A DNA stretch of 63,990 nucleotides, the filler included, from Octopus bimaculoides (Eukaryota): assembly GCF_001194135.2 (NCBI RefSeq). It is 7 parts of 7 records of this genome, joined end to end, with 100 filler letters (N's around TTAATTAATTAA, not from the genome) between each part and the next. Parts side by side here need not be neighbours in the genome. Positions count along the whole stretch, not along the records: positions 1 to 28,573 come from NC_069007.1; 6 more parts are not named here. The stretch is one strand, 5' to 3'. Below, one piece after another: positions 803 to 28,573 of this stretch. Position 1 is the first letter of the stretch; every line of letters starts with the position of its first letter. The position numbers were made by a program, and so were the translations under genes. The notes below the pieces were generated by a model. The model ran no database searches, had not been told where the DNA came from, and saw nothing but the letters and a program-made list of their open reading frames with translations.

Positions 803-1170
803 TTGTTGTTGGCACTCCGTCACTTACGACGTCGAGGGTTCCAGTTGATCCGATCAACAGAACAGCCTGCTCGTGAAATTAACGTGCAAGTGGCTGAGCA
901 CTCCACAGACACGTGTGCCCTTTAAACGTAGTTCTCGGGGATATTCAGCGTAACACAGTGTGACAAGGCTGACCCTTTGAATTACAGGCACAACAGAAAC
1001 AGGAAGAAAGAGTGAGAGAAAGTTGTGGTTGAAGAGTACAGCAGGGTTCACCACCATCCCTTGACGGAGCCTCGTGGAGCCTTAGGTGTTTTCGCTCAAT
1101 AAACACTCACAACGCCCGGTCTGGGAATCGAAACCGCGATCCTATGACCGTGAGCCATTGCGCCTCTACG
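803..1170 (-). mobile_element. tRNA-derived SINE family A, near full length, inserted into an R4-like LINE
   Basis: Reverse complement of the full copy at 20253-20641. Flanked by a 13-bp duplication, atccaagaacagg (790-802) and attcaagaacagg (1171-1183), with 1 mismatch. Confidence 0.85.
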
Positions 1171-1750
1171 ATTCAAGAACAGGAGATTGCTACTAAATAC
1201 CTAATCAACAAAAGAGACAGTGAAGCATTTGGAGTTCCAAGATGCAACCGTAAATATAGATTATATCATATTTCGCTGAAGTTCATCACGCATATGATTA
1301 GCAGTTGCCCCCAAATATTATCAAGGTACTACCCCCCAAAGCGACAGGACTGTCCTGGGTGCGCACACAAATATCAGCACAAGGAATACTGGTTAAACAT
1401 TCCCCTCAAAACGTGTCGGGCCAGATATTATTTGGGACAGACAAGAAAAAGGTATGTACAGTCATAGAAATCAGCTGTCCTGCTGATACGAATATCTCTT
1501 TGAAAATCAAGGAGAAAGAAGATAATTATAGACAGCTGCTTCGAAACCTCCAGTTTCTATATCCGGATTACAAATTTACATTTGTACCAATAGCAATTGG
1601 AGCACTTGGTTTTGTAAATAAATGCCTAATTGTCTGTCCGGATGAGCTTGGATTTTCAGAAAAAGAAATCAACCAACTAACTTGCACGTTACAAAGACAA
1701 TCAGCAAGCGGAACAGTAAAAACTATGATATACTTTTATCAGGTTTAAAA
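1171..1750 (+). mobile_element. 3' fragment of a restriction-like-endonuclease (RLE) non-LTR retrotransposon, R4/Dong-like; frameshifted
   Basis: Reading across frames gives IQEQEIATKYLINKRD, a decayed CCHC knuckle (RCNRKYRLYH...THMISSCP..SRYY), PDIIWDRQEK, and VCTVIEISCPADTNISLKIKEKEDNY...VPIAIGALG. These fit the zinc knuckle plus PD-(D/E)xK RLE domain. The frame continues on the other side of the SINE (LVIQEQ at about 784-802). Confidence 0.8.
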
Positions 1751-2822: not shown

Positions 2823-2829
2823 AAACCGC

Positions 2830-2990
2830 TGCCTGTGTCGTAAATAGCTTGCTTCCCAATAACATGGTTCCGGGTTCAGCCCCCACCGCGTGGCACCTTG
2901 GGCAAGTGTCTTCTACTATAGCCACAGGCCGACTAAAGCTTTGTGAGTGTATTTGGTAAACGGAAACTGAAAAAAGCCCGTCGTATATAT
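2830..2990 (+). mobile_element. SINE family B, 5' part running into an N gap
   Basis: gcttgcttcccaa...ggttccgggttcag...gcaccttgggcaagtgtcttctactatag...ggaaactgaaaaaagcccgtcg. Confidence 0.85.
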
Positions 2991-4157
2991 NNNNNNNNNN
3001 NNNNNNNNNNNNNNNNNNNNNNNNNNNNNNNNNNNNNNNNNNNNNNNNNNNNNNNNNNNNNNNNNNNNNNNNNNNNNNNNNNNNNNNNNNNNNNNNNNNN
3101 NNNNNNNNNNNNNNNNNNNNNNNNNNNNNNNNNNNNNNNNNNNNNNNNNNNNNNNNNNNNNNNNNNNNNNNNNNNNNNNNNNNNNNNNNNNNNNNNNNNN
3201 NNNNNNNNNNNNNNNNNNNNNNNNNNNNNNNNNNNNNNNNNNNNNNNNNNNNNNNNNNNNNNNNNNNNNNNNNNNNNNNNNNNNNNNNNNNNNNNNNNNN
3301 NNNNNNNNNNNNNNNNNNNNNNNNNNNNNNNNNNNNNNNNNNNNNNNNNNNNNNNNNNNNNNNNNNNNNNNNNNNNNNNNNNNNNNNNNNNNNNNNNNNN
3401 NNNNNNNNNNNNNNNNAGACAAATGAAAAAAATTTTTTATTTAGTATTTTTTCATTTGTCTTGCCCTTTTACAGTCTGTTGTGTCGCTAAATTTTTACTG
3501 AGAACATATTTTTCGTGGTTAGATGATTCGGCATCTATTTCTAGCATATAGGAGTCCACTTTTGCTGGTCATTCCTCTTATTTTTGTATGTAATATAATT
3601 TTAATCTTCGTTTGTTTTTTTAATATGCTAGACCACTGGTTTTAATTGATTAATATCGATTTCTACCCTTCATCCGTGTACAATGTATTTACTGGGATCC
3701 CAGAATCCATTTGGAACTGGGAGTGAAACTAAATGTTATTTTGCACAACCGTGAAGGGATATGAAACACAGTGACCTCCCTTGTAGTGCAAAACTGTCGG
3801 GACAGCCTTGTTCTCTAAAACAAGACCAAACATTCCTGGAAATATGTACCCTACGCTAGGGAGTGACCTACAGCAAGAGTCTTTAAACTACAGCGTAGAC
3901 TCATATAGGCTCTCTGTCTCTCTCATGTCCTCATTAGGGATGTTGCTATATTTCTTCGGGCCTCTTCAATATTGCTTGAATTTCATATGTTCATTAGATT
4001 CTTTTTCAAATTTTCTACACTGATGGTATTAAATATGTTGAAAATAATCTACTGAAAATCTAATGTATTTCAAGTGGTTGGAAAAATTCTAAAAAAATCC
4101 TTGAGTCGTTCTTGCCGCGGGATCGAAACTGCAAGTTGCCGGTCTGCAGAAATAAAC

Positions 4158-4450
4158 GTTTGTTGGCACTCCGTCGCTTACGACGTCGGGGGCTCCAGTT
4201 GATCCGATCAACGGAACAGCCTGCTCGTGAAATTAACGTGCAAGTGGCTGAGCACTCCACAGACACGTGTACCCTTAACGTAGTTCTCGGGGATATTCAG
4301 CGTGACACAGTGTGACAAGGCTGACCCTTTGAATTACAGGCACAACAGAAACAGGAAGTAAGAGTGAGAGAAAGCTGTGGTGGAAGAGTACAGCAGGGTT
4401 CGCCACCATCCCCTGCCGGAGCCTCGTGGAGCTTTAGGTGTTTTCGCTCA
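4158..4450 (-). mobile_element. SINE family A, cut off by an N gap
   Basis: Nearly identical to the reverse complement of 20345-20641. Confidence 0.85.
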
Positions 4451-4756
4451 NNNNNNNNNNNNNNNNNNNNNNNNNNNNNNNNNNNNNNNNNNNNNNNNNN
4501 NNNNNNNNNNNNNNNNNNNNNNNNNNNNNNNNNNNNNNNNNNNNNNNNNNNNNNNNNNNNNNNNNNNNNNNNNNNNNNNNNNNNNNNNNNNNTATATATA
4601 TACATATACACGCACACAGACAGCAGCAGTCGTATTATTTCAGACTGTTAGTCTATTGAACTGAATAACAGAAAGAAAGAAAAAAAAAAGAAAGAAAGAA
4701 ACGAAGAACTTGTTAGAAGGTGGTGGTGGAACTGTTGAAGACTGACACATATTCTT

Positions 4757-5087
4757 TCTCTTTACTCTTTTACTTGTTTCAGTCATTTGACTGTGGCCAT
4801 GCTGGAGCACCGCCTTTTAGTCGAGCAAATCGACCCCGGGACTTATTCTTTGTAAGCCTAGTACTTATTCTATCGGTTCTCCTTTTTGCCGAACCGCTAG
4901 CTGACGGGGATGTAAACACACCAGCATCGGTTGTCAAGCGAAGTTGGGGGGACACAGACACACACAAACATATACACACATACATACATATATATATATA
5001 TAAATACGACGGGCTTCTTTCAGTTTCCGTCTACCAAATCCACTCACAAGGCTTTGGTCGGCCCGAGGCTATAGTAGAAGACACTTA
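4757..5087 (-). mobile_element. SINE family B lacking the tRNA head
   Basis: cttttacttgtttcagtcatttgactgtggccatgctggagcaccgcc...gacgggcttctttcagtttccg...gaggctatagtagaagacactt. Confidence 0.85.
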
Positions 5088-5579
5088 TATACACTTGATA
5101 TGTATTGACGTATTCATATATAGACACACAGTGACATATATAGATAATAATACTATCTCTTTATATATATATATTTTATGTATGTTGCGTATTTATACAC
5201 TCTAGAGTGTCGCTGATATATACATACATTAAAAACCTACTTATTTATAAGTGAAGTTCCTTTATAAATTCACAAAATAGACAGGAAATAAGTCAAAGTA
5301 AAAACTTAACATCACAAGACAGGAAGAATTGATAAATACAATTATAATAAAAGTTTTAACTTAATATATCCAGGTTACGGGAAAAGAATAAAAGTTTAAA
5401 AATATACTTAATCACGTAATTACTATAATTAATATAGTTATGATAATATTGTCTCCAATGTAGATAATAATTGTCCAAAATTATAGTTTCCTGTTTCTGT
5501 TTTTAAAAAAAATTAACTTGGAAAGTCTTTTAAATTTTGTTTTAGATTTTATCTGAGAAAAAAAATATCATAAGCTAAC

Positions 5580-5634
<55 letters not shown>

Positions 5635-5781
5635 GCAAGAGAGTTTGGGGTAGAAGATTCAACCCACTAAGGGATAGTATCTATCCAATATACTGCTGGG
5701 AGGGTACCCAATTATTGTTACACTAGTGTTATACCACACACACACACACACACACAATATATATACATACAATCTCTCTCT

Positions 5782-5825
<44 letters not shown>

Positions 5826-6881
5826 TTTTATAGATATATAACTATATATGATTTTAAGTATGTAAAATCCACATCCATATATACACTAGAAGTTTATATA
5901 AAATCCACACACATATATATACACACTACATAAGTTTTAGTATATGAAATATACAGACTGTATATAATTAATTTGTCATAGGATTCAATTTTAAACCCCG
6001 TTTGTGTTCTCTTTATGTATAAATAATATATGTATACACATGCACACACACACACACACACACAGTTTTCAGCTTGTTTGCATCTCTTCTGCTGGCAGTA
6101 AATTTTTATTCAGACAAGTTACGTGAAGATTCATATTCTAGTCTTTAAGGAAGTTCCTCTCGACCTATTCCTCCCATTTATCTATTCCTTTTATCTCTAC
6201 CTCCCCCTCTTTCTCTTCTCTCATTCCTCCTCTACGACGTCCCCCCTCTCTCTATTATCCTCTATCTAACTCGTTTTCCCTCCTTCTCTCTCTCTAACTT
6301 TACTCCTTCACTTCATCATTTTGACATTTACCAAAATATTTTCTTTTTGGACAGAAACCAGAAGCATTTGCCCCCTTTTTTTTTTACTTTTCTGGTAAGG
6401 AACAGCTTTTATATTCCTCCTGACCCCTTCTTAATCTAAAACTCGATCAGGGCACTTAAAGATCTACATACATTATCTAAATAATTACACACACACACAT
6501 ACACTTATAAATACACACTATATATAAGTATATACTTCTGAATATATAATATAAACGTATCTGTGTGTGTGTATGTAAATGCAACAACAGTTGAAGTAGT
6601 TTTGTGTCGAGTTAATAAATAAATCAGTCAGAAAGAGTGCGTGTGTGTGTGTGTGTGTGTGTGTGGGACGTTGACAGGTCAGGTCGGTCTCCAACCAGAG
6701 AATAATAGAAAGTGTGAACTTCGGTAAACCAGAGCGGGAAAACAAAAAAAAAAACCCAGTTAAACTGTTACAACAAACAAATATTGATAATAATAATAAT
6801 AATAACAACAGGAATAAGAATTCTAATTAAACGTTGGATATACCAAAGTGTTGTGCGATTTGAGGTGGTGTGAGTTATTTC

Positions 6882-7264: not shown

Positions 7265-7561
7265 ATAATTGGATGCAGCTGGTACTTCCTTGTGTCGCTA
7301 ATGGTGTCTTTCACGTGTTAGACGATTCTTTAGTCTTCATGCAGTGTATGTATATACGTATGTGTGCGTATATAATATATAGTCAGTTTCCACCGGTGGG
7401 GAAACTTGGAAATCGACAATCACTGTCAACAAAATTATGGATTATAAAATAAGACTTTGCACATGTATTGAGTGCTTTGTTCAGTTTGTCCGTTTCACTC
7501 TATCTAAAGTCTTTTTATTTCAACTAATCTCAATACTTACCCGTGTATATATGCAACTGTG

Positions 7562-7607
<46 letters not shown>

Positions 7608-7812
7608 TTTGTATGTGATAATGTATGTAAATATGATAGTGTTAGGTCCTCTTATTGTAATCATTTTAGGATGGAGCCGTTTAGATATCAAATGTTAGCT
7701 GATAACACTAAGCGAAGAGTATAACTCCCATACTGAGCGTGATGAGGACAACATTAATTGTTATAACAATAACTGATAACATCCGTATAGTATAAAGCGA
7801 TTTCCACTTTAT

Positions 7813-7847
<35 letters not shown>

Positions 7848-9054
7848 GTATATGTATATATATACACGCGCTTCAGTCATGGGGAATGTATTTCCCTCAC
7901 GACCGAATTTCGTGATCCTTTCAAACGCCGTCTTTTTCACTCGTCCCCCGAATGCAGTTTCGAATCGCAAGGACGGCAGCGGTCTGGGAACAGCATTGAT
8001 GCCACAACATCTGCAAGCCTTTCGTGTGTTCATGTCGATGTAAGGCACTGTTATTACTTAATGTAGTTATGGCCGTGTGCGCGTATAATAAATATGGGGA
8101 TATATTTAGATTAAGGGGCTTTTGTGTATGACTATATATAGGGCTTATACACGGCAGATGATGTTGGGTATACACCCATACATAAAATTAAACAATAGGA
8201 TGAAAAATTGGATATTAATTAATATCAATTTAATGCCAGGTAACAAGCACATTAAAAGAATCGGGGAGATTCAGGAAAAATCTGAGATCTCAAACGATTA
8301 TTGTATATGTGTATATATAAGAATATATAAAAATATATATATAACGGAGGCCACTACGTGGACCGCCAGTGTGCTAGAAGAAGATCACATGTCATACACC
8401 CATACATACATGTATGTATATGCGTGCGGCAGTTGATGTTGGGTGTATATTTTCGTAGTTTGGTTCGTAGAATACGAGTATGTATTGGTAGTATATATAA
8501 TATATATTTCCACATGACTCGACTGTGTATGTATGTGTGTGTATATATAAATATAGATGTACTTGAATTTGTGTTGATGAATATATTATGTATATAATAT
8601 ATTAGGAAAAACCTAAAAATACAAGGTCTTTTCCGGTAGGTATGTACGTGTACGTCTGTTTTCTCTACTGATATGGGTTGGACGATTCGACAGGATGTTG
8701 GACCCCGTCTGATTCCTGTGTCTCTGACATAGTTTCCACGGTTGGTTGCCCATCATAATATCAACCGCTCTATCGATTGTATTTTTCATGGTACAGGTAC
8801 TAATCAGGTCGCCTTGTAATTCAAAACTAAAGAACCTCACGATTGAGAAGAATAATAGTAAAGAAGGTGGCGTCAGTGTAAGGGAGTTGGAGGGGATACT
8901 AAGAGAAGACGACTTCAAATTGCATCTGATCGTGGGGCCCCGGTTCAAGAGTTCCAGTGTCTTGAGGGTTGTGGAACCATCACTTAGCCACTGTTGTTCC
9001 TATGTCTATTCTAACCTGGAATATTAGTACCTGTCAGGGTCACAACCATGGATT

Positions 9055-9432
9055 GGTTGGCACTCCGTCGCTTACGACGACGAGGGTTCCAGTTGATCCG
9101 ATCAACGGAACAGCCTGCTCGCGAAATTAACGTGCAAGTGGCTGAGCACTCCACAGACACGTGTACCCTTAACGTAGTTCTCTGGGATATTCAGCATGAA
9201 ACAGTGTGACAAGGCTGACCCTTTGAATTACAGGCACAACAAAAACAGGAAGTAAGAGTGAGAGAAAGTTGTGGTGAAGGAGTACAGCAGGGTTCGCCAC
9301 CATCCCCTGCCGGAGCCTCGTGGAACTTTAGGTGTTTTTGCTCAATAAACACTCACAACGCCCAGTCTGGGAATCGAAACCACGATCCTATGACCGCGAG
9401 TCCGCTGCCCTAACCACTGGGCCATTGTCCCT
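9055..9432 (-). mobile_element. SINE family A, full length
   Basis: Reverse complement of 20253-20641, including the tRNA-like head. Confidence 0.88.
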
Positions 9433-10555: not shown

Positions 10556-10597
10556 TCATTTCTTTCCAAAGTAAAGTAATATTTTCTTATGATGAAA

Positions 10598-11170
10598 GCG
10601 GCGAGCTGGCAGAAATGTTAGCACGCTGGGCGAAATGCTTAGCGGCATTTCGTCTGCCGCTACGTTCTGAGTTCAAATTCCGTCGAGGTCGACTTTGCCT
10701 TTCATCCTTTCGGGGTTGATTAAATAAGCACCAGTTACGCACTGGGGTCGATATAATCAACTTAATCCGTTTGTCCCCTCTATGTTTAGCCCCTTGTGGG
10801 CAATAAAGAAATAAGAAACGTTANNNNNNNNNNATTCCGTCGAGGTCGACTTTGCCTTTCATCCTTTCGGGGTTGATTAAATAAGCACCAGTTACGCACT
10901 GGGGTCGATATAATCAACTTAATCCGTTTGTCCCCTCTATGTTTAGCCCCTTGTGGGCAATAAAGAAATAAGAAACGTTAGCATGCTGGGCAAAATGCTT
11001 AGCGGTATTTCGTCTGTCTTTATGTTCTTAGTTCAAATTCCATTGAGGTTGACTTTGCCTTTCATCCTTTCGGGGTCGATGAATTAAGTACCAGTTATGT
11101 ACTGGGATTGATCTAATTGACTGGCCCCCTCCCCAAAAACTTCAGGCCTTTTGCCTAGAGTAGAATGGAA
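10598..11170 (+). mobile_element. SINE family C, C1-C2 dimer; the apparent third unit is an assembly overlap
   Basis: Head ggcgagctggcagaaatgttagcac, B box, C1 tail, junction aagaaacgttagca, then the C2 tail gccttttgcctagagtagaatggaat. Confidence 0.85.
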
Positions 11171-12145: not shown

Positions 12146-12521
12146 CAGTCATTTGACTGCGGCCATGCTGGAGCACCGCCTTTAGTCGAGTAAATCGACC
12201 CCAGGACTTATTCTTTGTAAGCCTAGTACTTATTCTATCGGGCTCTTTTTGCTGAACCGCTAAGTTACGGGGACGTAAACAGAGCAGCATCGGTTGTCAA
12301 GCGATGTTGGGGGGAGAAACACAGACACACAAACACACACGTACACACATGCATACATATATACGACGGGCTTCTTTCAGTTTCCGTCTATCAAATCCAC
12401 TCACAAGGCTTTGGTCGGCCCGAGGCTATAGGAGAAGACACTTGCCCAAGGTGCCACGCAGTGGGACTGAACCTGGAACCATGTGGTTGGTAAGCAAGCT
12501 ACTTACCATGCAGCCACTCCT
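12146..12521 (-). mobile_element. SINE family B, full length
   Basis: cagtcatttgactgcggccatgctggag... through ...taagcaagctacttaccatgcagccactcct, including the A-box/B-box head. Confidence 0.88.
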
Positions 12522-12639
12522 ATGCAAACACACATTTATATATGCCTATAAGCATATATATATATATTTCAGTATGAAACCTGGACAAATTAATGTGTGT
12601 GTGTATATTCATACGTATGTATGTATGCATGTACCTACA

Positions 12640-12855
12640 TACAAACAGCAAAGCTACATGTTAGTGGAACATGGGCTGTAAACATGGAGGACATGTAAAG
12701 ACTTGAAAGAAATGAAACGAGCATGCTCAGCTGGATATGCAATGTCACTGTGCATGTGCAACAAAGTGTAAAGGTGCTGGGAGAAGAAAACCGGTCATAA
12801 GAGGTATCAGATGTAATGTGCATGAGAGAAGACTACTGGTATGGACATCCTATAT
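12640..12855 (+). mobile_element. RTE-clade LINE fragment (region after the RT domain)
   Basis: TAKLHVSGTWAVNMEDM*RLERNETSMLSWICNVTVHVQQSV...IRGIRCNVHERRL-WYGH. This fits the RTE motifs LHGSETWA and RRLRWYGH. Confidence 0.75.
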
Positions 12856-14594: not shown

Positions 14595-15150
14595 TCAGAT
14601 AAATGGATGTGCCCAATATATTGAAGAGCAATCAGTAAGAATTCCATAGGGCAGGGGTTTTCAAACTTTTTGACATTTCAGGCTTTACCTTAAGGACCCC
14701 CTTATAAATGCTTATGAAATTTATACATAAATATTTGCTTAAAATAACATATATTTTTACATTTATTTATTTAACAACATTTAACAAATAGGTTTATTGT
14801 CAATTAAAAAACATATATAAAATCAAATTGCCCATAAAAGTTATTTGCTGTCTTGTCCTTGCGGACCCCCTGTGGTCCGCGGACCACAGTTTGAAAACCC
14901 CTGCCATAGGGTGTTGTTGATGGGATCTGTAGCTGTACATGAGGTGTAATGAAATCAAAGACAGGCTGACAGGGAATGAAGACTTTGCTTGTAAAAGAAT
15001 AGTTAGCAGCCAGAGCACCAGTAAAATGAATTCTTCGCAATGCTTAGATGGCTCTCTAGAAGTAATTGATAGCTTCTGTTACCTAGGCAACCTAATCAGC
15101 AGTGAAAGGGGAGGGTGCTCTGAAAGTGGAGCAGCCAAAATTGAAAAATA
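14595..15150 (+). mobile_element. RTE-clade LINE fragment interrupted by hAT MITE copy 2
   Basis: KWMCPIY...NSI lies before the MITE. After it the frame reads RCNEIKDRLTGNEDFAC...SLEVIDSFCYLGNLISSERGGCSESGAAKI, matching the RTE LEVVDSFRYLG motif. Confidence 0.75.
14652..14903. mobile_element. Non-autonomous hAT (Buster/Charlie-like) MITE, copy 2
   Basis: 15-bp perfect TIR caggggttttcaaac / gtttgaaaacccctg, with a perfect 8-bp TSD CCATAGGG at 14644-14651 and 14904-14911. The body is nearly identical to copy 1. Confidence 0.92.
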
Positions 15151-15489
15151 AAAAAAAAAATGCAGAAAATGTTATGGTGGGGTGGGGGTGTAAGTATTTA
15201 CTTTAGCTGACAAATGTTAAATATGCAAATTAGTGTATCCAGTTGCTTTAACCTGTAATATTAGTGGGTTTATATGTAATGTGTTTGTAATTAGTTAATG
15301 GTTGATGGATACTGACAAAAACAACAAAAAAGAATCGAAGCATCCAAACAACTGTTCCCTCTCTTTCTGTCCACGCACATGTTGTAAATGGTGTCAGCTA
15401 AACAATCTATAGATATGTTCTATGGATGGAATCAGATACTGTTAACACACCAGTAATTTAATGTGTGCCTGTGTCTGTCTTATATATAT

Positions 15490-15820
15490 GTGGCATCTTG
15501 CACAAGTGTCTTCTACTATAGCCCCGGGCCGACCAAAGCCTTGTGAGTGGATTTGGTAGACGGAAACTGAAAGAAGCCCGTCGTATATGTGTGTATATAT
15601 ATATATATGTGTGTGTGTCTGTGTTTGTCCCCCTAGCATTGCTTGACAACCGATGCTGGTGTGTTTACGTCCCCGTCACTTAGCGGTTCGGCAAAAGAGA
15701 CCAATAGAATAAGTACTAGGCTTCCAAAGAATAAGTTGCGCGGTCATTTTGCTCGACTAAAGGCGGTGCTCCAGCATGGCCGCAGTCAAATGACTGAAAC
15801 AAGTAAAAGAGTAAAATAGT
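15490..15820 (+). mobile_element. SINE family B, 5'-truncated
   Basis: gtggcatcttgcacaagtgtcttctactatag...cagtcaaatgactgaaacaagtaaaagagtaaaatag. Confidence 0.85.
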
Positions 15821-17416: not shown

Positions 17417-17447
<31 letters not shown>

Positions 17448-17493
17448 GTATGTATATATGTATATAGATATATATATGTATGTATATATGTAT

Positions 17494-17538
<45 letters not shown>

Positions 17539-18018
17539 ATATATATATATTCAGTGTTTAGACAGTGTAAGGAATGGACTTGACATTAGCTCCATTCTTT
17601 GAGTAGTTGTTGTGGCTAAAGAATATGTCAAATTAATTCAATGAACTCTTCCTTATTTATTCCTGACTATTCTCTGTTCTATATTGCTTTTGCTGCTGTA
17701 CTGCTACTTAGAGTCACTTCCTGTTTCTTTCTCACATTCAGTAACCTATAGTTCCACCTATATGTCTGTCTCTCCGACACATTTAGCAGCCCATAATTTT
17801 CTTGTCTCTCGTTAGCCTATAGTTCTCTCCTCTCTCATTAACCTATAGTTCTGTTGTCACCCACTCACACATTTAATAGTCTACAGTTGTATTATAAAAC
17901 TTGTTAATGTAATCAGTGTTATATTGTCAGACTCAGCTGCCAAATAGGTCCTCCAGGTAGACACAGTTTGTCTCTATAGGACTATCAATGTTTAACTACC
18001 CTTATAGAATATTACTGG

Positions 18019-18236
18019 TGGAGGCACAATGGCCCAGTGGTTAGGGCAGCAGACTCGCGGTCATAGGATCGCAGTTTCGATTCCCAGACCGGGCGTTCTG
18101 AGTGTTTATTGTGCGAAAACACCTAAAGCTCCACGAGGTTCCGGCAGGGGATGGTGGCGAACCCTGCTGTACTCTTTCCCCACAAATTTCTCTCACTCTT
18201 CCTGTTTCTGTTGTGCTTGTAATTCAAAGGGGTCAG
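18019..18236 (+). mobile_element. SINE family A, 5' half only
   Basis: tRNA-like head ggaggcacaatggcccagtggttagggcagcagactcg...gtttcgattccc. Similarity stops after aattcaaaggggtcagcc. Confidence 0.85.
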
Positions 18237-18646
18237 CCACCTTTAGGTGTAATTGTTTCTGCCAACCAGATTCCACTTAAAAGAAATGACTCAAAGCAAG
18301 AACACAGGGAAAAGACTGTACAGGGATTGAACCTGGACATAGGTGATTGCAAAGTAAATTTCTTAACCACACCATCATCTGTTTGTGTGTGTGTGTCTGT
18401 GTGTTTGCTAAGAAAATATGTTACGAAAAAGCACAAACACTTTCCAATTACTGTTAATAATGATTAATATTCCTAATTATTAAAGCATTTTATCAAAACA
18501 AGAATCATAATTATGGTGTGAGATGTAAATAAAAGATAATTTGTAAGAATCTGACTGGTTTCTCCATGGAATGGTATGTTGTGATAACATCGATATGAGA
18601 CATTCTGCAGCAAGGAAGCAGATGCCTGCTGTATTATATATACATA

Positions 18647-20252: not shown

Positions 20253-20641
20253 GGAGGCGCAATGGCCCAGTGGTTAGGGCAGCAGACTCGCGGTCATAGG
20301 ATCGTGGTTTCGATTCCCAGACCGGGCGTTGTGAGTGTTTATTGAGCGAAAACACCTAAAGCTCCATGAGGCTCCGGCAGGGGATGGTGGCGAACCCTGC
20401 TGTACTCTTTCACCACAACTTTCTCTCACTCTTACTTCCTGTTTCTGTTGTGCCTGTAATTCAAAGGGTCAGCCTTGTCACACTCTGTGTCACGCTGAAT
20501 ATCCCCGAGAACTACGTTAAGGGTACGCGTGTCTGTGGAGTGCTCAGCCACTTGTACGTTAATTTCACGAGTAGGCTGTTCCGTTGATCGGATCAACTGG
20601 AACCCTCGACGCCGTAAGCGACGGAGTGGCAACCAACAACA
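20253..20641 (+). mobile_element. tRNA-derived SINE family A, full-length reference copy with TSD
   Basis: A box TGGCCCAGTGG, B box GGTTTCGATTCC and an (AAC)n tail. Perfect 13-bp TSD AGAAATAACATGT at 20240-20252 and 20642-20654. Confidence 0.92.
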
Positions 20642-22021: not shown

Positions 22022-22293
22022 AACAGACACGTGTACCCTTAACGTAGTTCTCGGGGATATTCAGCGTGACACAATGTGACAAGCCTGACCCTTTGAATTA
22101 CACGCACAACAGAAACAGGAAGTAAGAGTGAGAGAAAGAGTACAGCAGGGTTCACCACCATCCCCTGCCGGAGCCTCGTGGAGCTTTAGGTGTTTTCACT
22201 CAATAAACACTCACAATGCCCAGTCTGGGAATCAAAACCGCGATCCTATGACCACGAGTCCACTGCCCTAACCACTGGGTCATTGCGCCTCCA
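22022..22293 (-). mobile_element. SINE family A, 3'-truncated
   Basis: acagacacgtgtacccttaacg...ccattgcgcctccac. Confidence 0.85.
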
Positions 22294-23202
22294 CTGTGCT
22301 GTACACACCTCCTTCAAAGACCCAATCTCTACTTGAGTCTTTGAAGATGTGAGAATCACTTCATGAGTCTCCACAGTACCCCGTTATATGACTCTCAAGA
22401 TCCTGAGAGTATATTTGACATAAGAGTCATTAATTAGTCAACTCTAATAAATTCATTTTTATTCGTTATATCTAACTTTCATTTTTTTTTTTCAATTTGT
22501 TTTCAGTCAATTTGTCTAATGAACAGAAGCTATGATTTCATTCATTGTTTGATCAACTTTTAAAGGAAGGTAAATGATTTTTTTGTTTAATTGCTTTACT
22601 TAATTATTATTGTTGTTGTTGTTTTTTTTGTCTTTTAAAAGTTTGGTCCATGAGGACTTAGCCTTTTGTTACCCCACAGTTTTTGGGAATTGACTCAAAT
22701 TGACATTCCTCACTAATTCCACCATCTCCAAAGACTTTATGATGAAGAAATCAAAATCTTATTAACTCAAAAAGCAAACTTAGTTACTGTTGTTGCTTGG
22801 CTCCACCAAATCATTGAACAGACCAAGGAAAGCAGACATTCCAGTTGTGACAATCCCTTCTTCTTGTATATCAGGAACTTGTTTGTCAAATATATAGTTT
22901 AAGATAGTTTGATTTGATGTAGAATTGACTGTTATTTCCTGTAACTCAAGCAACCATATAAAAGCTCCCTTGTTGAACAAGATCAGCCAACTGATGGTTC
23001 TTCATGTTGTGGAGTGGAGGGTGATATTATTTGGCAGTGATTGAGCAGACAGACCAGATGATGCTTTTGCCTTCAGATAGGTTATTCGTGTAAGAAATGG
23101 TGCTGCTTGTGGTGAATTTCAGACAGAAAAGAACAAGGGATGTGTTTTGTTAATCCGTCTGTATTTGTCCCTTTCTGTTTGAACTTGGGTGCTTGTATTG
23201 TT

Positions 23203-23378
23203 GCAGGAGTGGCTGTGTGGTAAGTAGCTTGCTTACCAAACACATGGTTCCGGGTTCATTCCCACTGCGTGGCACCTTGGGCAAGTGTCTTCTACTATAG
23301 CCTCGGGCCGACCAAAGCCTTCTGAGTGGATTTGGTAGACGGAAACTGAAAGAAGCCCGTCGTATATATGTATATATA
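23203..23378 (+). mobile_element. SINE family B, 5' part running into a gap
   Basis: gcaggagtggctgtgtggtaagtagcttgcttacc...ggttccgggttcattcccactgcgtggcaccttgggcaagtgtc. Confidence 0.88.
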
Positions 23379-24269
23379 NNNNNNNNNNNNNNNNNNNNNN
23401 NNNNNNNNNNNNNNNNNNNNNNNNNNNNNNNNNNNNNNNNNNNNNNNNNNNNNNNNNNNNNNNNNNNNNNNNNNNNNNNNNNNNNNNNNNNNNNNNNNNN
23501 NNNNNNNNNNNNNNNNNNNNNNNNNNNNNNNNNNNNNNNNNNNNNNNNNNNNNNNNNNNNNNNNNNNNNNNNNNNNNNNNNNNNNNNNNNNNNNNNNNNN
23601 NNNNNNNNNNNNNNNNNNNNNNNNNNNNNNNNNNNNNNNNNNNNNNNNNNNNNNNNNNNNNNNNNNNNNNNNNNNNNNNNNNNNNNNNNNNNNNNNNNNN
23701 NNNNNNNNNNNNNNNNNNNNNNNNNNNNNNNNNNNNNNNNNNNNNNNNNNNNNNNNNNNNNNNNNNNNNNNNNNNNNNNNNNNNNNNNNNNNNNNNNNNN
23801 NNNNNNNNNNNNNNNNNNNNNNNNNNNNNNNNNNNNNNNNNNNNNNNNNNNNNNNNNNNNNNNNNNNNNNNNNNNNNNNNNNNNNNNNNNNNNNNNATAA
23901 TTATAGAATAACACACACCAAGTTCCTCAACGAAGACTTCTCAAACAACTAAAAGATAACAACATTAATAAAGATTTCTATCGTGTGTAATCCTTTCAAG
24001 ATAAAGGTGAATCCAGTGATGGAAGAGTTTCCGAGTATGCGTGTTAATGACGTTTGAAGACTTGTCTAAAACGTGCGCGTGTCTGTGTCTGTGTGTGTCT
24101 GACGGGGCTGTAGAACGCCTTCAGTCATTAGTCTACTGAATAAAGCATGATCTGGAGATAAGCAACAACAATTAGTTTGTAGTGAAACCTCTCTCTCGGC
24201 CATTCAATCACAAATGATAACGAAGCTGCTAACATTTAGCTTTCGGCTACCTTGGCCCTTTCTGTCCTA

Positions 24270-25366: not shown

Positions 25367-28307
25367 CTAAAGAGAGAGAGAGAGATTTGTCATCGCTTCT
25401 TGTAACCTGACATAAATCTAAGACAGCATTTTTCACTTGATTAATCTCGTTAATACTCTTCAATAATTTACAAACTTGTGTTCAATGAAGTAGCTAAGCC
25501 CGACGACTTCCAAGTTTGTAGGCATCTATGTAGTTTAGAGGTGAATAACCGATGACATTCAGCATCCAAATATATTCCACAAGGAAAGACATTGTTTTGG
25601 CCAGAGGTAGTCTGGTTTGTCCTGGTGAAAGCCATTTGAGGTTAAATTAACAATCTTTATTGACAGCACTTGCAATTCAAGCCAAGATGAGCGGTCGAAG
25701 AATCTTCCATATGGTCTCAGCATGAAATAACAGTCAAATATCTCTACTATTTTAAAGAAGAACAAAATACATTGTGTTCAGTAGTCCTAGATACACTATG
25801 CAGGTGCAAAACTGGCTGTTATCAGAATATTGGGGTTAACTACATCTTTGAGTGTTTTGGGGGTTAATAAGATACCAGTCAGATACTGGTGTCGATTTTG
25901 CTCTTTTCTGTATTCTGCTTGAATCAGTTACATTGCAATATGAAGTTTTTAGTGAGGGTGTGTGTGTGTGTGGCAGGGGGGGTACTCAGAAATGGAGTTG
26001 GGTTGAGCAAGGGGCTAGCAAATCCCTTTTCTTATATAAATCGATATTTTACAGGAACAATACAAGGACAGCTTAATGTGTATTATATTCCAGAGAGGAA
26101 CTAAAGTAAAAGGAAGAGATGCACAATAGCCAGAAAAGACTGGAAGGTCATAACTAGGTTGTCTTTGATCGTAGGTCTGTTCATTCAAGATCTCCTCAGG
26201 TTAAACCTCAAACACCATGGCCCACTTTTGTGCTCAGTCTTTTCTTGTCCACCACCTCACATAATGGATTATCTTCTCAACTTGCAAAATATGAAAAAAC
26301 TAACTCATTCACAGATTCAAACACAATTTTTGCACAAGATGGTTTCACCAGTTACTCTAATGGTTTGCTTTTCATATCTCTTCATCAGTGTTATAAGCCA
26401 AAATTCTGTTTTATCCCATCTTTACTCTAACTCACAGTAAGTTTCACATCACTGGTCAGACTGAACAAGTTGCAATTTACAGATTAAAGTAATTTACACC
26501 TGTCTTTATACTCATTAATCGCCATTTACCTGTTTGATTACCTAAGACTGCTTCTTCTATGAAATGAATATCCTATTTTAAAATTATGTAAATTATAACA
26601 TTTCATAAAAATTTCATGTTATAATTTATCTTCCAAACACCAGCTTAATGAAGGTTTTGAATTTTGTTACAAGGCTAGCAATTTCAGTGGATGGGGTAAG
26701 CCAATTAAATTGACCCCAATGTTCAACTGGTATTTATTTTATTGATCCCAAAAGAATGAAAAATAAAGTCGACCTCAACAGCATTTGAAATCAGAACCTA
26801 AAATCGGAAGAAATGCTGCTAAACATTTTTCCCCAATGCGGTTATATTTCTACCTGCTCACTGCCTTGAACACCATCTTAATAATGAATTATTTTACTAA
26901 ATTCTTCACTATTTTCGAAATCAACTTCCACCTATCTTTTCTACCCACCATTCCTGGGAAAGTCATGGGTGGAGAGCCCTCAGGCACCTCCTCCATTGGG
27001 ACCTATTACAAGCAATAGTCCTTACACATTCTGGCTGGATTCCCAAGTGTGACCAACAAAATCCATAGATATTATCCAACCAACTCGTTTTTGGTCTACC
27101 CCTTGATCTCCTGTCATTTGGTGCATCTTAAAGAATCTATCTTGCAATTCAAAATTAACTTAGTCTTTGAAAAGAAATATGGTATCAAAAGAGTTGATGT
27201 ATTTTCTCCCTAAATCACCTGCTTTTACAATTCATAACCTTCCAAATTTTCATTCTGGACTTTGACTTAGTGTAATATGTGTTCATATACATGCCAGCCT
27301 CCAGTTCTGTAGTTCTGAGTTCCATAGATTACAGACTAAACTTTTCTTCTTCACGTCTTAATATTAACTTCATCAAAGCAATCAATTCTTCTCATCTTCA
27401 ATCCCTGTTAAGTTTTATCATTCATCTTTGTTATTGTCAATATTTTCATTATTGTGATAATGAAATATTTAATTAGAAGCATTGTTTGTATGGAGTGTCA
27501 ATTTACAGTGATAAACGAGCTTTAATGCTCCAACTTCATTAATTATTTGATTAACCTCTTGTCATTAATTATCTTACAATTCCATATAAAGGCGGGAGGG
27601 GATGAAAGCTTTTAGTGTAAACATCAAATAAATATGTAACAATGAAGAAATACATAATAAGAATGACATGTGACAGAGAGGGCAGGGGAGATGTGTCACA
27701 GTGGCATGTCACAGCAATGTGCCACAGCAATGTGTCACTGTGAACGGATGTTTCAACATGATGAGATATATCAGAGTAGATTCTGTCAAAGGCTCAGGTG
27801 GTTGTATTAAACCAGGAAATGGATGAAGTCTGTGCTCGATCAGGGTTGACCTGGGGTTAAATAGCCATATGGCTGTTCTTTGAGACACAACAAGAACAAC
27901 AGATAAAGGTTGAAAGGCGGGGAAGAAGTCATTTTTTTTCAGAATCCTTTTAAAGAAGATGACATTCCAGCTATTTGAGCAAGAAAATGATTCAAAAAAT
28001 TTTGGAAATAAAGGAGTTACTAAAACATCTTGGTCATTACTAAGCTGGTAACGGGGACCTAAATTAACATGGAATTTTAAAAGGAAATTTTAATTTAGAT
28101 CATTTTATAAAGAAAGTTTGTATCATAGGTACGGGGGTGGTCTTTGTATCATAGGTAGGTGGGTATCAAAAGAAGAAAATATCTCCTTGTTTTAACATAA
28201 AAGTTTATTTTTTTCTTGGCAGTTTCTAGTAATAACCTAGTCTTCCATACACACAGACAGACACACACACATCCAACCATCCATCTATCTATCTGTCTTA
28301 TTTTGAT

Positions 28308-28436
28308 TGAGTCAACCTCTTGTTCCTCTGAGTTTCATCTACAGATACACAGGATCTTCAAGCAAGTTATGAATCAACTTGCCTGAAGATCCTGTACACC
28401 CACAGCTGAAACTCAGTGTTCCAAGAGACTGACTCA
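28308..28436 (-). ncRNA. Candidate structured RNA hairpin (pri-miRNA-like or hpRNA)
   Basis: 28308-28368 pairs with 28436-28376 without gaps around a 7-nt loop. There are 47 of 61 Watson-Crick pairs plus 9 mismatches that are all G·U on the minus strand, giving 56 of 61 paired. The top 30 bp are uninterrupted. Confidence 0.45.
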
Positions 28437-28498
28437 TCCGAAATAAAAACATTAATCACCTCTACTACTCTTTTTTTTTGTTTCCAACAGTTAACACT

Positions 28499-28533
<35 letters not shown>

Positions 28534-28573
28534 GAGAGAGGTTATGCTTAAAATTAAAGTTTAGATAATCTTC

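What the first reader, a model, noticed from the sequence alone, without database searches (positions are those of the whole stretch)
28308..28436. 129-nt gap-free hairpin with complete strand asymmetry of wobble pairs: candidate novel miRNA/hpRNA or ADAR substrate
Seen: 61 positions pair in perfect register (i with 56744-i) around the loop ATGAATC. There are 47 Watson-Crick pairs and 14 mismatches: 9 A:C, 5 pyrimidine:pyrimidine and 0 G:T. On the minus strand all 9 become G·U, giving an unbroken 30-bp apical stem, a 1x1 mismatch, 10 more bp, an internal loop and a 15-bp basal stem. The minus-strand apical part reads CUGUGGGUGUACAGGAUCUUCAGGCAAGUU-GAUUCAU-AACUUGCUUGAAGAUCCUGUGUAUCUGUAG. Random transitions in a decaying DNA palindrome should give A:C and G:T about equally; 9:0 has a two-sided probability of about 0.004. 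The other fold-backs here (48878, 62551) show mixed types. No second copy or TSD is seen in the window. Established: coleoid cephalopods have a large lineage-specific miRNA expansion and very high A-to-I editing, and A:C mismatches are preferred ADAR sites. Inference: either a minus-strand Drosha/Dicer substrate, or a plus-strand RNA in which editing converts nine A:C mismatches to I:C pairs.
Basis: partly seen in the sequence, partly recalled or inferred. Interest (0 to 1): 0.75.

Follow-up and report, generated by a model that had tools for sequence, protein, structure and literature searches.

The report
Decaying palindromic repeat forming long hairpin
The 129-base hairpin is real, but it looks like one of the many decaying inverted repeats of this repeat-rich genome rather than a demonstrable microRNA gene. 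The one-sided wobble-pair pattern that made it look special rests on only a few clustered mutation events.

Summary
Positions 28308-28436 pair gap-free around ATGAATC with 47 Watson-Crick pairs, 9 A:C, 5 pyrimidine:pyrimidine and 0 G:T. The minus-strand RNA folds to -78.0 kcal/mol (z -11.9) and the plus-strand RNA to -60.3 (z -9.8).

The functional inference is weak:
- Six of the nine A:C pairs sit in one 8-pair CA-rich patch (permutation p 0.0015), so they are not independent.
- Counted as runs, 9:0 (p 0.004) becomes 5:0 (p 0.06).
- A neutral-decay simulation reaches the observed strand difference in 7% of runs.
- The palindrome extends to 28298-28446, and that extension contains a T:G.
- The stem is about 62 bp with a 5-7 nt loop, which is not a canonical Drosha substrate.
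- Rfam gives only sub-threshold generic-hairpin hits.
- Molluscs are reported to lack an endo-siRNA pathway.
- Octopus genomes are reported to be exceptionally rich in dsRNA-forming inverted repeats, against about 162 miRNA genes.

Copy number, orthologues, small RNAs and editing could not be tested, because none of the collections available holds this genome.

Best reading: a DNA-level palindrome, either a MITE-like element or a local inverted duplication, that would be an ADAR substrate if transcribed. A residual oddity is that all 14 mismatches favour the minus-strand RNA. This keeps a young minus-strand RNA gene, or fixed editing footprints, possible at low probability.

The parts
28308..28368 (.). 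Left arm of the inverted repeat (the 3' arm of the minus-strand hairpin RNA)
   Evidence: Pairs gap-free with 28376-28436: 47 of 61 Watson-Crick. Reported as inverted repeat I2.
28369..28375 (.). Spacer / apical loop ATGAATC (minus strand GAUUCAU; the folded loop is 5 nt on minus and 7 nt on plus)
28376..28436 (.). Right arm of the inverted repeat (the 5' arm of the minus-strand hairpin RNA)
28298..28307 (.). Outer extension of the palindrome, left side. It pairs with 28437-28446 at 7 of 10 positions and includes T:G at 28304:28440 and A:C at 28306:28438. TA at 28299-28300 and 28444-28445 is the only candidate target-site duplication.
28437..28446 (.). Outer extension of the palindrome, right side
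28341..28348 (.). CA-rich patch holding 6 of the 9 A:C mismatches (partner 28396-28403). On the minus strand it is a UG-rich run of tandem G.U pairs.
   Evidence: Clustering permutation p = 0.0015.
28396..28403 (.). Partner of the CA-rich patch on the right arm
28323..28327 (.). Pyrimidine-rich internal loop (partner 28417-28421) holding 4 of the 5 Y:Y mismatches. Both arms read GTTCC in direct orientation (28322-28326 and 28418-28422), as a small in-place inversion would give. On the minus strand it is a purine-rich loop with G:A, A:A and A:G.
   Evidence: and direct reading
28249..28271 (+). (AC)n microsatellite upstream. It is complementary to (GT)n at 28503-28530, giving a weak outer inverted symmetry (28232-28271 versus 28508-28545).
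28503..28530 (+). (GT)n microsatellite downstream

Best explanation
This is a 129-149 bp near-palindromic inverted repeat that arose at the DNA level. It is either a copy of a small palindromic non-autonomous transposon (MITE-like, possibly with a TA target-site duplication) or a local inverted duplication or template-switch product.

Its arms have since diverged by about 23% at a roughly neutral pace. The mismatches came from a handful of clustered events in CA-rich and pyrimidine-rich patches. It is not a dedicated canonical miRNA gene.

If the locus lies in a transcribed region, either strand folds into a long, almost continuous double-stranded hairpin. The expected fate of such RNA in this kind of animal is binding and promiscuous A-to-I editing (unwinding) by ADAR, as for other repeat-derived dsRNA.

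Shown: the structure, its stability on both strands, the clustering of the mismatches and the lack of a match to any known RNA family. Inferred: the DNA-level origin, neutrality and the ADAR fate.
For: Structure:
- The repeat is gap-free with a 7-nt spacer and extends to 71-nt arms. This is the anatomy of a palindromic DNA element, not of a roughly 35-bp pri-miRNA stem.
- Both strands fold far better than shuffles (z -9.8 and -11.9).

Divergence and mismatch pattern:
- Arm-to-arm identity is 77%. This is about the same as the 71-76% identity between SINE copies in the same piece, so it is compatible with neutral decay.
- Mismatches are clustered: 6 A:C in 8 pairs (p 0.0015), 5 runs in all, and 4 of the 5 Y:Y in one 5-position loop.
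- With clusters counted as events, the strand asymmetry is p 0.06-0.25. A neutral-decay simulation gives |ddG| >= 17.7 kcal/mol in 42 of 600 runs.

No link to a known RNA:
- No Rfam family reaches its gathering score. The best is MIR6135, a plant family, at 37 bits against a threshold of 99, matching on structure only.
- No tRNA-like head is present.

Background rate from the literature:
- Of 19 species, O. bimaculoides has the highest fraction of loci able to form near-perfect dsRNA with nearby sequence (4.4e-3 of random 50-mers) and the strongest hyper-editing.
- Palindromic repeats such as the Xenopus Harbinger MITE fold on themselves and are heavily edited (PMC5625713).
- Only 162-164 miRNA genes are annotated per octopus genome (PMC9699675).
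Against: - No second copy is present in the 28.5-kb piece.
- No convincing target-site duplication exists. The only candidate is TA, which is itself part of the palindrome. Membership in a transposon family is therefore unproven.
- All 14 mismatches, in every cluster, are of the type that is milder for a minus-strand RNA (9 G.U, 5 purine:purine). The plus strand has no G at any of the 28 mismatched bases.
- If the mismatches were independent this would be very unlikely under a strand-symmetric neutral model (2 x 0.5^14). Even with clusters collapsed to 8 runs it is about 0.008 (my arithmetic).
- Transcription and editing were not tested.
Confidence: 0.55

Rival explanations
1. A minus-strand structured RNA under selection: a young, lineage-specific miRNA-like gene, possibly born from a palindromic repeat as hsa-mir-548 was from Made1.

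In this reading the internal loop at 28323-28327 / 28417-28421 acts as the basal junction, and about 12 bp of lower stem follows. Drosha and Dicer would release a duplex such as 5p UGUGGGUGUACAGGAUCUUCAG (plus 28383-28404) and 3p GAAGAUCCUGUGUAUCUGUAGA (plus 28338-28359). The G.U-rich end would favour loading of the 5'-U 5p arm.
For: - All 9 transition mismatches are G.U on the minus strand and none on the plus strand. All 5 other mismatches are purine:purine there.
- The minus strand is 17.7 kcal/mol more stable than the plus strand.
- The stem has far more than 16 paired positions, so the first MirGeneDB structural criterion is met (PMC12539619).
- There is a precedent for palindromic MITEs giving miRNAs (PMC1784062).
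- Octopus miRNA annotation is stated to be an underestimate (PMC9699675).
Against: - The stem is about 62 bp (42 bp above the internal loop), against the canonical 35 +/- 1 bp. The loop is 5 nt, against the preferred 10 nt or more (established knowledge of Drosha/DGCR8 substrates).
- The asymmetry is statistically fragile.
- Rfam gives no family match.
- Six candidate seed-site 7-mers are not among the O. vulgaris seed k-mers in the (truncated) supplements of PMC9699675.
- The prior is very low: about 162 miRNA genes against a very large number of dsRNA-forming repeats.
- Arm divergence matches that of neutral SINE copies.
Confidence: 0.13
2. The G.U pairs are footprints of A-to-I editing of a minus-strand hairpin transcript that became fixed in the DNA.

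There are two possible routes. A-to-G substitutions at heavily edited sites may be neutral or favoured ('hard-wiring'). Alternatively, a hyper-edited RNA may have been reverse-transcribed and inserted.

Editing a perfect A-U-rich dsRNA gives I.U pairs on the transcribed strand only, and in clusters. That would explain both the complete asymmetry and the clustering.
For: - The 9 same-direction transitions are clustered (p 0.0015).
- On the minus strand, the G of G.U pairs has a 5' U in 5 of 9 cases, against 4 of 26 for the A of intact A-U pairs (Fisher p 0.03). ADARs prefer a 5' U or A.
- If all changes were A-to-G, the ancestral patch would read CTATAGATATACAG / CTGTATATCTATAG. This is an AT-rich motif typical of this 35% GC piece (inference).
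- At most 2 of the 9 can be CpG decay.
- Octopus shows the strongest hyper-editing among 19 species (PMC5625713).
- Hard-wiring of edited sites is discussed in PMC7186786 (abstract only).
- On the minus strand the hairpin is followed by a compound microsatellite that could be a retroposon tail.
Against: - The direction of the changes cannot be determined without an outgroup.
- The 5'-U enrichment is confounded by the (UG)n nature of the patch.
- Two of the nine sites have the disfavoured 5' G.
- This does not explain the five purine:purine mismatches.
- Microsatellites are everywhere in this piece, so the 'tail' is weak evidence.
- No evidence shows that the locus is transcribed.
Confidence: 0.12
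3. A plus-strand RNA in which nine A:C mismatches are preferred ADAR sites. Editing turns them into I:C pairs and tightens the stem.
For: - A:C mismatches are efficiently edited (established knowledge).
- Replacing the nine A by G raises the predicted stability from -60.3 to -106.1 kcal/mol.
Against: - The 5' neighbours of the nine A are U3, A2, C2, G2, so there is no ADAR-like context (read).
- Six sites lie in a patch that is unpaired in the plus-strand fold (an 8x8 internal loop). That is a poor ADAR substrate until edited.
- No selective reason is apparent.
- The five Y:Y mismatches are not rescued by editing.
Confidence: 0.05
4. An hpRNA-type endogenous siRNA locus: a long hairpin diced into siRNAs.
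For: A long, nearly continuous stem.
Against: - Molluscs, including O. bimaculoides, are reported to lack siDicer and siAgo, with at least five-fold fewer Dicer-signature read pairs than siRNA-producing species (PMC12479628).
- At about 62 bp the stem is much shorter than Drosophila hpRNAs (own knowledge).
Confidence: 0.03

Closest known systems
Made1 MITE / hsa-mir-548 family (PMC1784062)
   Same: A short, almost perfect palindrome with two long inverted arms around a spacer of about 6-7 nt. As RNA it folds into a very stable hairpin. It is a possible source of lineage-specific small RNAs, and a TA flank is compatible with a Tc1/mariner-type insertion.
   Different: Made1 is 80 bp (37-bp arms) and present in many copies with a defined consensus. 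Here the arms are 61-71 nt, no second copy could be found, the TA duplication cannot be told apart from the palindrome, and no small-RNA evidence exists.
Palindromic ~200-bp Harbinger repeat of Xenopus tropicalis, heavily hyper-edited by ADAR (PMC5625713)
   Same: A repeat that is itself a palindrome, folds on itself without needing a partner copy, and is a favoured ADAR substrate. Octopus is the other species with exceptional dsRNA potential and hyper-editing in that study.
   Different: The Harbinger family has a TWA 3-bp duplication and high copy number. Here TTA on the left and TAA on the right are not a direct duplication. Copy number and editing are untested.
Canonical bilaterian pri-miRNA (MirGeneDB criteria, PMC12539619)
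   Same: An imperfect hairpin with more than 16 paired positions, G.U wobbles tolerated on the transcribed strand, and a possible basal junction followed by a 12-bp lower stem.
   Different: The stem is about 62 bp instead of about 35 bp and the loop is 5-7 nt. There are no reads, no 2-nt offsets and no 5' homogeneity tested. There is no orthologue and no family match.
Inverted-repeat dsRNA in introns and 3'UTRs (e.g. inverted Alu pairs) as ADAR substrates
   Same: A long imperfect duplex of repeat origin, with the expected promiscuous clustered editing.
   Different: It is intramolecular within one 129-nt element rather than formed between two separate repeat copies.
Drosophila hpRNA endo-siRNA loci
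   Same: Long hairpin with near-perfect stem.
   Different: It is much shorter, and the dedicated siRNA machinery is reported absent in molluscs (PMC12479628).

Membership tests
Canonical animal miRNA gene | Imperfect hairpin precursor with at least 16 paired nucleotides in the stem | tested here: met
   47 Watson-Crick pairs plus 9 G.U on the minus strand. Criterion as listed in PMC12539619.
Canonical animal miRNA gene | Pri-miRNA geometry: a stem of about 35 bp (three helical turns) between single-stranded basal segments and an apical loop of about 10 nt or more | tested here: not met
   The stem is a continuous 62 positions, extendable to about 72, with a 5-nt (minus) or 7-nt (plus) loop. 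If the internal loop is taken as the basal junction the stem is still 42 bp. The threshold values come from established knowledge, not from a tool.
Canonical animal miRNA gene | Reads from both arms, 5' homogeneity and 2-nt 3' offsets (Drosha/Dicer signature) | not testable with these tools
   No small-RNA data are available.
Canonical animal miRNA gene | Presence and conservation in a second species, or a match to a described family | tested here: inconclusive
   Rfam gives nothing at gathering score; the best hit is 37 bits against 99. No printed match in 8.3 million papers. The supplements of PMC9699675 hold only seed k-mers and are truncated. MirGeneDB and related genomes are not available.
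MITE (miniature inverted-repeat transposable element) | Small, non-coding, with terminal inverted repeats | tested here: met
   129-149 bp, and the whole element is an inverted repeat. Only short chance ORFs are present.
MITE (miniature inverted-repeat transposable element) | Target-site duplication flanking the termini | tested here: inconclusive
   No direct repeat of 5 bp or more at symmetric boundaries. TA at 28299-28300 and 28444-28445 fits a Tc1/mariner-type duplication around a 143-bp element but is itself palindromic.
MITE (miniature inverted-repeat transposable element) | Multiple dispersed copies in the genome | not testable with these tools
   No second copy in the 28.5-kb piece. 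The collections hold no DNA of this genome: a SINE ORF present at least 6 times in the piece also found nothing. The 17-mer scans gave only chance hits.
ADAR substrate (long dsRNA) | Intramolecular duplex of more than about 20-30 bp | tested here: met
   On the minus strand, 31 uninterrupted bp within a 62-position stem. On the plus strand, 12+7 bp apical and 10 bp middle helices.
ADAR substrate (long dsRNA) | The locus is transcribed and shows A-to-G RNA/DNA differences | not testable with these tools
   No RNA-seq is available. No exon or host gene is recognisable in the piece.
hpRNA / endo-siRNA locus | A dedicated siRNA Dicer/Argonaute pathway in the organism | tested here: not met
   From the literature only: molluscs, including O. 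bimaculoides, lack siDicer and siAgo and show no endo-siRNA signature (PMC12479628). The organism of the window was not verified.

The most novel reading that the evidence does not exclude
The complete one-sidedness of all 14 mismatches (9 G.U and 5 purine:purine on the minus strand, no G at any mismatched base of the plus strand) reflects RNA-level history. There are two versions. In one, a palindromic repeat is being domesticated into a young minus-strand miRNA-like gene. In the other, clustered A-to-I edits of a minus-strand hairpin transcript have been written back into the genome. The second would make this locus a genomic fossil of hyper-editing.
Probability: 0.2. Interest if true: 0.55.

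Novelty: new member of a known kind. Interest (0 to 1): 0.27.

Why it matters
As it stands, this is one more repeat-type hairpin in a genome reported to be unusually rich in dsRNA-forming inverted repeats, so it adds little on its own.

It would matter if the strand-specific mismatch pattern proved to be general. A genome-wide excess of hairpins whose mismatches are all G.U on one strand would give a sequence-only way to find transcribed hairpins. It could also detect A-to-I edits fixed in DNA, in animals with very high editing. Either result bears on how new miRNAs arise and on how editing shapes genome evolution.

Tried and rejected
1. Known RNA family. Rfam at permissive E-value over 27800-28573, and at gathering score over the whole piece, gave only sub-threshold structure-only hits to unrelated (mostly plant) MIR families. 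Rejected.

2. Second copy in the piece. blastn with word sizes 7 and 11 found only the self inverted match and microsatellite hits.

3. Copies or orthologues elsewhere. None of these attempts found anything:
- Exact-product look-ups of ORFs over and near the hairpin.
- A chimeric peptide search of three reading frames of the hairpin.
- 17-mer scans of the metagenome, prokaryote-genome and viral collections, which gave only chance matches of at most 36 nt.
A control search with a SINE ORF present at least 6 times in the piece, plus two TE-like ORFs, hit a single metagenome protein. These negatives therefore say nothing about copy number.

4. Host gene. No Pfam domain was found in 10 ORFs. There were no homologues for five further ORFs and no tRNA.

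5. Published octopus miRNAs. No paper prints any 14-mer of the stem. The supplements of PMC9699675 contain only 8-mer seed sites and are truncated. Six candidate seed-site 7-mers are absent from them.

6. Target-site duplication. Nothing of 5 bp or more at symmetric boundaries.

7. Larger palindrome. The match of 28232-28271 to 28508-28545 is mostly (CA)n against (GT)n plus a 7-mer. I judge it too weak.

8. CpG decay as the source of the asymmetry. At most 2 of 9 sites fit.

9. Regional strand composition bias. The piece has zero GC skew overall, and the hairpin's skew of -0.21 is within the normal spread (21% of windows).

10. In-place micro-inversions as the source of the mismatch clusters. 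This fits GTTCC (28322-28326 / 28418-28422) and the two AC/AC dinucleotides. It does not fit ACA against CAC at 28341-28343 / 28401-28403 (read).

Full report
**1. The observation**

The sequence at 28308-28436 is as described. In the register i + j = 56744, the 61 positions on either side of ATGAATC give the following:
- 47 Watson-Crick pairs;
- 9 A:C mismatches, at 28315, 28316, 28341, 28342, 28343, 28345, 28347, 28348 and 28361 with their partners;
- 5 pyrimidine:pyrimidine mismatches, at 28323, 28324, 28325, 28327 and 28338;
- no G:T.

As RNA, the plus strand folds to -60.3 kcal/mol (z = -9.76) and the minus strand to -78.0 kcal/mol (z = -11.93). None of 200 dinucleotide-preserving shuffles does as well for either strand. 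The minus-strand structure is 15 bp, an internal loop, 10 bp, a 1x1 mismatch, then 31 bp closed by a 5-nt loop.

The hairpin is kept when 424 nt of context are folded on either strand. It is the only long inverted repeat in the piece that is not a TA microsatellite. So the feature is real and far beyond chance.

**2. Two corrections to the observation**

First, the palindrome does not stop at the stated ends. It runs on to 28298-28446 (71-nt arms, 76% complementary). This extension contains a T:G at 28304:28440 and a further A:C at 28306:28438. '0 G:T' is therefore true only inside the chosen range, and the full count is 10:1.

Second, the nine A:C mismatches are not independent events.
- Six lie within one 8-pair patch (28341-28348 / 28396-28403), where both arms read as degenerate CA repeats. 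This is the sequence type that fills the flanks: (AC)n at 28249-28271 and (GT)n at 28503-28530.
- Two more are adjacent at 28315-28316.
- A permutation test gives p = 0.0015 for six or more in any 8-pair window, and p = 0.013 for five or fewer runs.

**3. The strand-asymmetry statistic**

The alternatives are:

| Way of counting | Split | Two-sided p |
|---|---|---|
| Independent mismatches | 9:0 | 0.004 |
| With the outer extension | 10:1 | 0.012 |
| Runs as events | 5:0 | 0.06 |
| Runs, with the extension | 6:1 | 0.125 |
| CA patch as one event | 3:0 | 0.25 |

I also ran a simulation. A perfect palindrome built from either arm received 9 transitions and 5 transversions at random. The difference in folding energy between strands had an SD of 9.8 kcal/mol, and reached the observed 17.7 in 42 of 600 runs, or 7%.

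One oddity remains, and I record it as unexplained. Every one of the 14 mismatches is the milder type for a minus-strand RNA. The nine transitions are G.U, and the five others are purine:purine, including G:A and A:G beside a C-G pair. Put another way, the plus strand has C12, A9, T7 and no G at the 28 mismatched bases. Four of the five Y:Y mismatches again form one cluster (28323-28327), where both arms read GTTCC in direct orientation, as a small in-place inversion would produce. With runs as events this is 8:0, p about 0.008. With five clusters it is p about 0.06.

The region is not unusual in strand composition. The GC skew of the piece is 0.00, and the hairpin's -0.21 lies within 21% of windows.

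**4. What it is**

The anatomy is a gap-free inverted repeat of 61-71 nt arms around a 7-nt spacer. That is the anatomy of a DNA palindrome: a small palindromic non-autonomous transposon, or a local inverted duplication.

Arm-to-arm identity is 77%. This is about the same as the identity between SINE copies within this piece (71-76%), so it is compatible with neutral decay since a similar time.

A systematic search for target-site duplications found nothing of 5 bp or more at symmetric boundaries. The only candidate is TA at 28299-28300 and 28444-28445, around a 143-bp element. This would fit a Tc1/mariner-type insertion, but it cannot be separated from the palindrome itself.

No second copy exists in the 28.5 kb. 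An outer inverted match (28232-28271 against 28508-28545) is mostly (CA)n against (GT)n, and I treat it as weak.

**5. Context**

The piece is AT-rich (35% GC, CpG observed/expected 0.62). It has 2,038 N in assembly gaps and is full of microsatellites and SINE-like repeats.
- No tRNA was found.
- No Rfam family was found.
- No Pfam domain was found in ten ORFs.
- No protein homologue was found for the ORFs nearest the hairpin.

No host gene or direction of transcription could therefore be assigned. I could not verify the organism.

**6. Related sequences**

Every route to related sequences failed.
- Exact-product look-ups of ORFs over and near the hairpin found nothing.
- A peptide search with three reading frames of the hairpin found nothing.
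- A 17-mer of the apical stem found only single chance matches in prokaryotic, metagenomic and viral contigs, with no alignment longer than 36 nt.

A control shows that these negatives are uninformative. A SINE-derived ORF that occurs at least six times in the piece also found nothing. Of the whole chimeric control query, only one TE-like ORF (1302-1745) hit a single metagenome protein at 54% identity. Copy number and conservation therefore remain untested.

**7. Test against miRNA criteria**

MirGeneDB requires (PMC12539619):
- an imperfect hairpin with at least 16 paired nucleotides;
- reads from both arms;
- 5' homogeneity;
- 2-nt offsets.

Only the first can be tested here, and it is met.

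The geometry that Drosha/DGCR8 prefers is a stem of about 35 bp between single-stranded flanks and a loop of about 10 nt or more (established knowledge). That geometry is not met: the stem is 62 positions, up to about 72 with the extension, and the loop is 5-7 nt.

A non-canonical register can still be drawn. The internal loop would serve as basal junction, followed by a 12-bp lower stem, then a duplex of UGUGGGUGUACAGGAUCUUCAG and GAAGAUCCUGUGUAUCUGUAGA. This leaves a 30-bp upper stem.

Rfam gives only structure-driven hits far below threshold, such as plant MIR6135 at 37 bits against 99. No paper prints any 14-mer of the stem. The supplements of the octopus miRNA paper hold only 8-mer seed sites and are truncated, and six candidate seed-site 7-mers are not among them.

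**8. Priors from the literature**

Two octopus species have 162-164 annotated miRNA genes each, which the authors call an underestimate (PMC9699675).

Among 19 species, O. bimaculoides has the highest fraction of loci that can form near-perfect dsRNA with nearby sequence. The figure is 4.4e-3 of random 50-mers, at more than 95% identity over at least 40 bp, which is a stricter standard than this hairpin meets. It also has the strongest hyper-editing signal. The same paper describes a palindromic Xenopus Harbinger repeat that folds on itself and is heavily edited (PMC5625713).

[quoted passage not shown] Molluscs, including O. bimaculoides, are reported to lack siDicer, siAgo and endo-siRNAs (PMC12479628), which argues against an hpRNA reading.

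Inverted-repeat hairpins thus outnumber miRNA genes by orders of magnitude. An asymmetry worth a likelihood ratio of perhaps 10-100 does not overturn that prior. This weighing is my inference.

**9. Most likely explanation and rivals**

- **Best explanation (0.55).** A DNA-level palindrome, either MITE-like or an inverted duplication, decaying roughly neutrally through a few clustered events. If transcribed, it would be a generic long-dsRNA substrate for ADAR.
- **Rival A (0.13).** A young minus-strand miRNA-like gene, as hsa-mir-548 arose from the palindromic Made1 MITE (PMC1784062).
- **Rival B (0.12).** The G.U pairs are A-to-I edits of a minus-strand transcript fixed in DNA. This would explain both the one-sidedness and the clustering. 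It gets mild support from a 5'-U excess at the G of G.U pairs (5 of 9 against 4 of 26, p = 0.03), although that is confounded by the UG-repeat nature of the patch. CpG decay can account for at most two sites.
- **Rival C (0.05).** Editing all nine sites would raise stability to -106 kcal/mol. However, the nine A have no ADAR-like neighbours, and six lie in an 8x8 internal loop in the unedited fold.
- **Rival D (0.03).** An hpRNA or endo-siRNA locus.

**10. Verdict**

- The functional interpretation cannot be decided with these tools, and what could be tested weakens it.
- The feature is best filed as a new member of a known kind: a repeat-type, dsRNA-forming inverted repeat.
- Interest is low to moderate. 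It rests only on the unexplained uniform direction of the mismatches.
- The decisive work is a genome BLAST for copy number and orthologues, polarisation of the mismatches, and mapping of small-RNA and stranded RNA-seq reads.

Noticed in passing
window 948-1106, 4300-4647, 9194-9352, 18102-18277, 20277-20517, 22089-22268 (both orientations): A SINE-like repeat recurs at least six times. It is recognisable from the recurring chance ORF 'VFIERKHLKLHEAPAGDGGEPCCTL...SCFCCACNSKGQPCHT' and its reverse frames. A search with this peptide found nothing in the protein collection.
   Followed up: partly
window 2824-3468, 4717-5202, 12227-12678, 15445-15675, 23153-23926: A second recurring repeat gives the peptides 'IYDGLLSVSVYQIHSQGFGRPEAIVEDTCPRCHAVG' and 'RRASFSFRLSNPLTRLWSARGYRRRHLPKVPRSG'. 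Several copies abut assembly gaps (runs of N).
   Followed up: no
window 26671-26898 versus 131-288, 326-494, 10570-10757, 10839-10914, 2106-2180: A third dispersed repeat has copies 71-76% identical to each other. I used this as a rough yardstick for neutral divergence.
   Followed up: partly
window 1302-1745 (+): A 148-aa open frame with no Pfam domain. It is 54% identical over the matched part to a 245-aa protein (P0001) from a 1-kb ENA metagenome contig. It is probably the C-terminal part of an undescribed transposable-element protein.
   Followed up: partly
window 26966-27127 (-) and 14933-15148 (+): These peptides look by eye like the C-terminal tails of non-LTR retrotransposon reverse transcriptases ('RGRPKTSWLDNI...', 'VIDSFCYLGNLIS'). 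Pfam gave no significant hit, so this is unconfirmed.
   Followed up: partly
window 5562-5855, 7535-7877, 17417-17553: Long (TA)n / (TATG)n microsatellite tracts score as inverted repeats of 50-86 nt. They are low-complexity, not structured elements.
   Followed up: no
window 28232-28271 and 28508-28545: The flanks of the hairpin carry (AC)n upstream and (GT)n downstream, each next to ATAACCT / AGGTTAT. This gives a weak outer inverted symmetry about 140-170 nt from the hairpin centre. It may be a remnant of a larger palindrome, or it may be chance.
   Followed up: partly
window 28473-28481 and 28442-28447: On the plus strand a T9 run lies 37 nt downstream of the hairpin and an AATAAA lies directly after it (read). 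In this AT-rich sequence neither is evidence of a transcript end.
   Followed up: no
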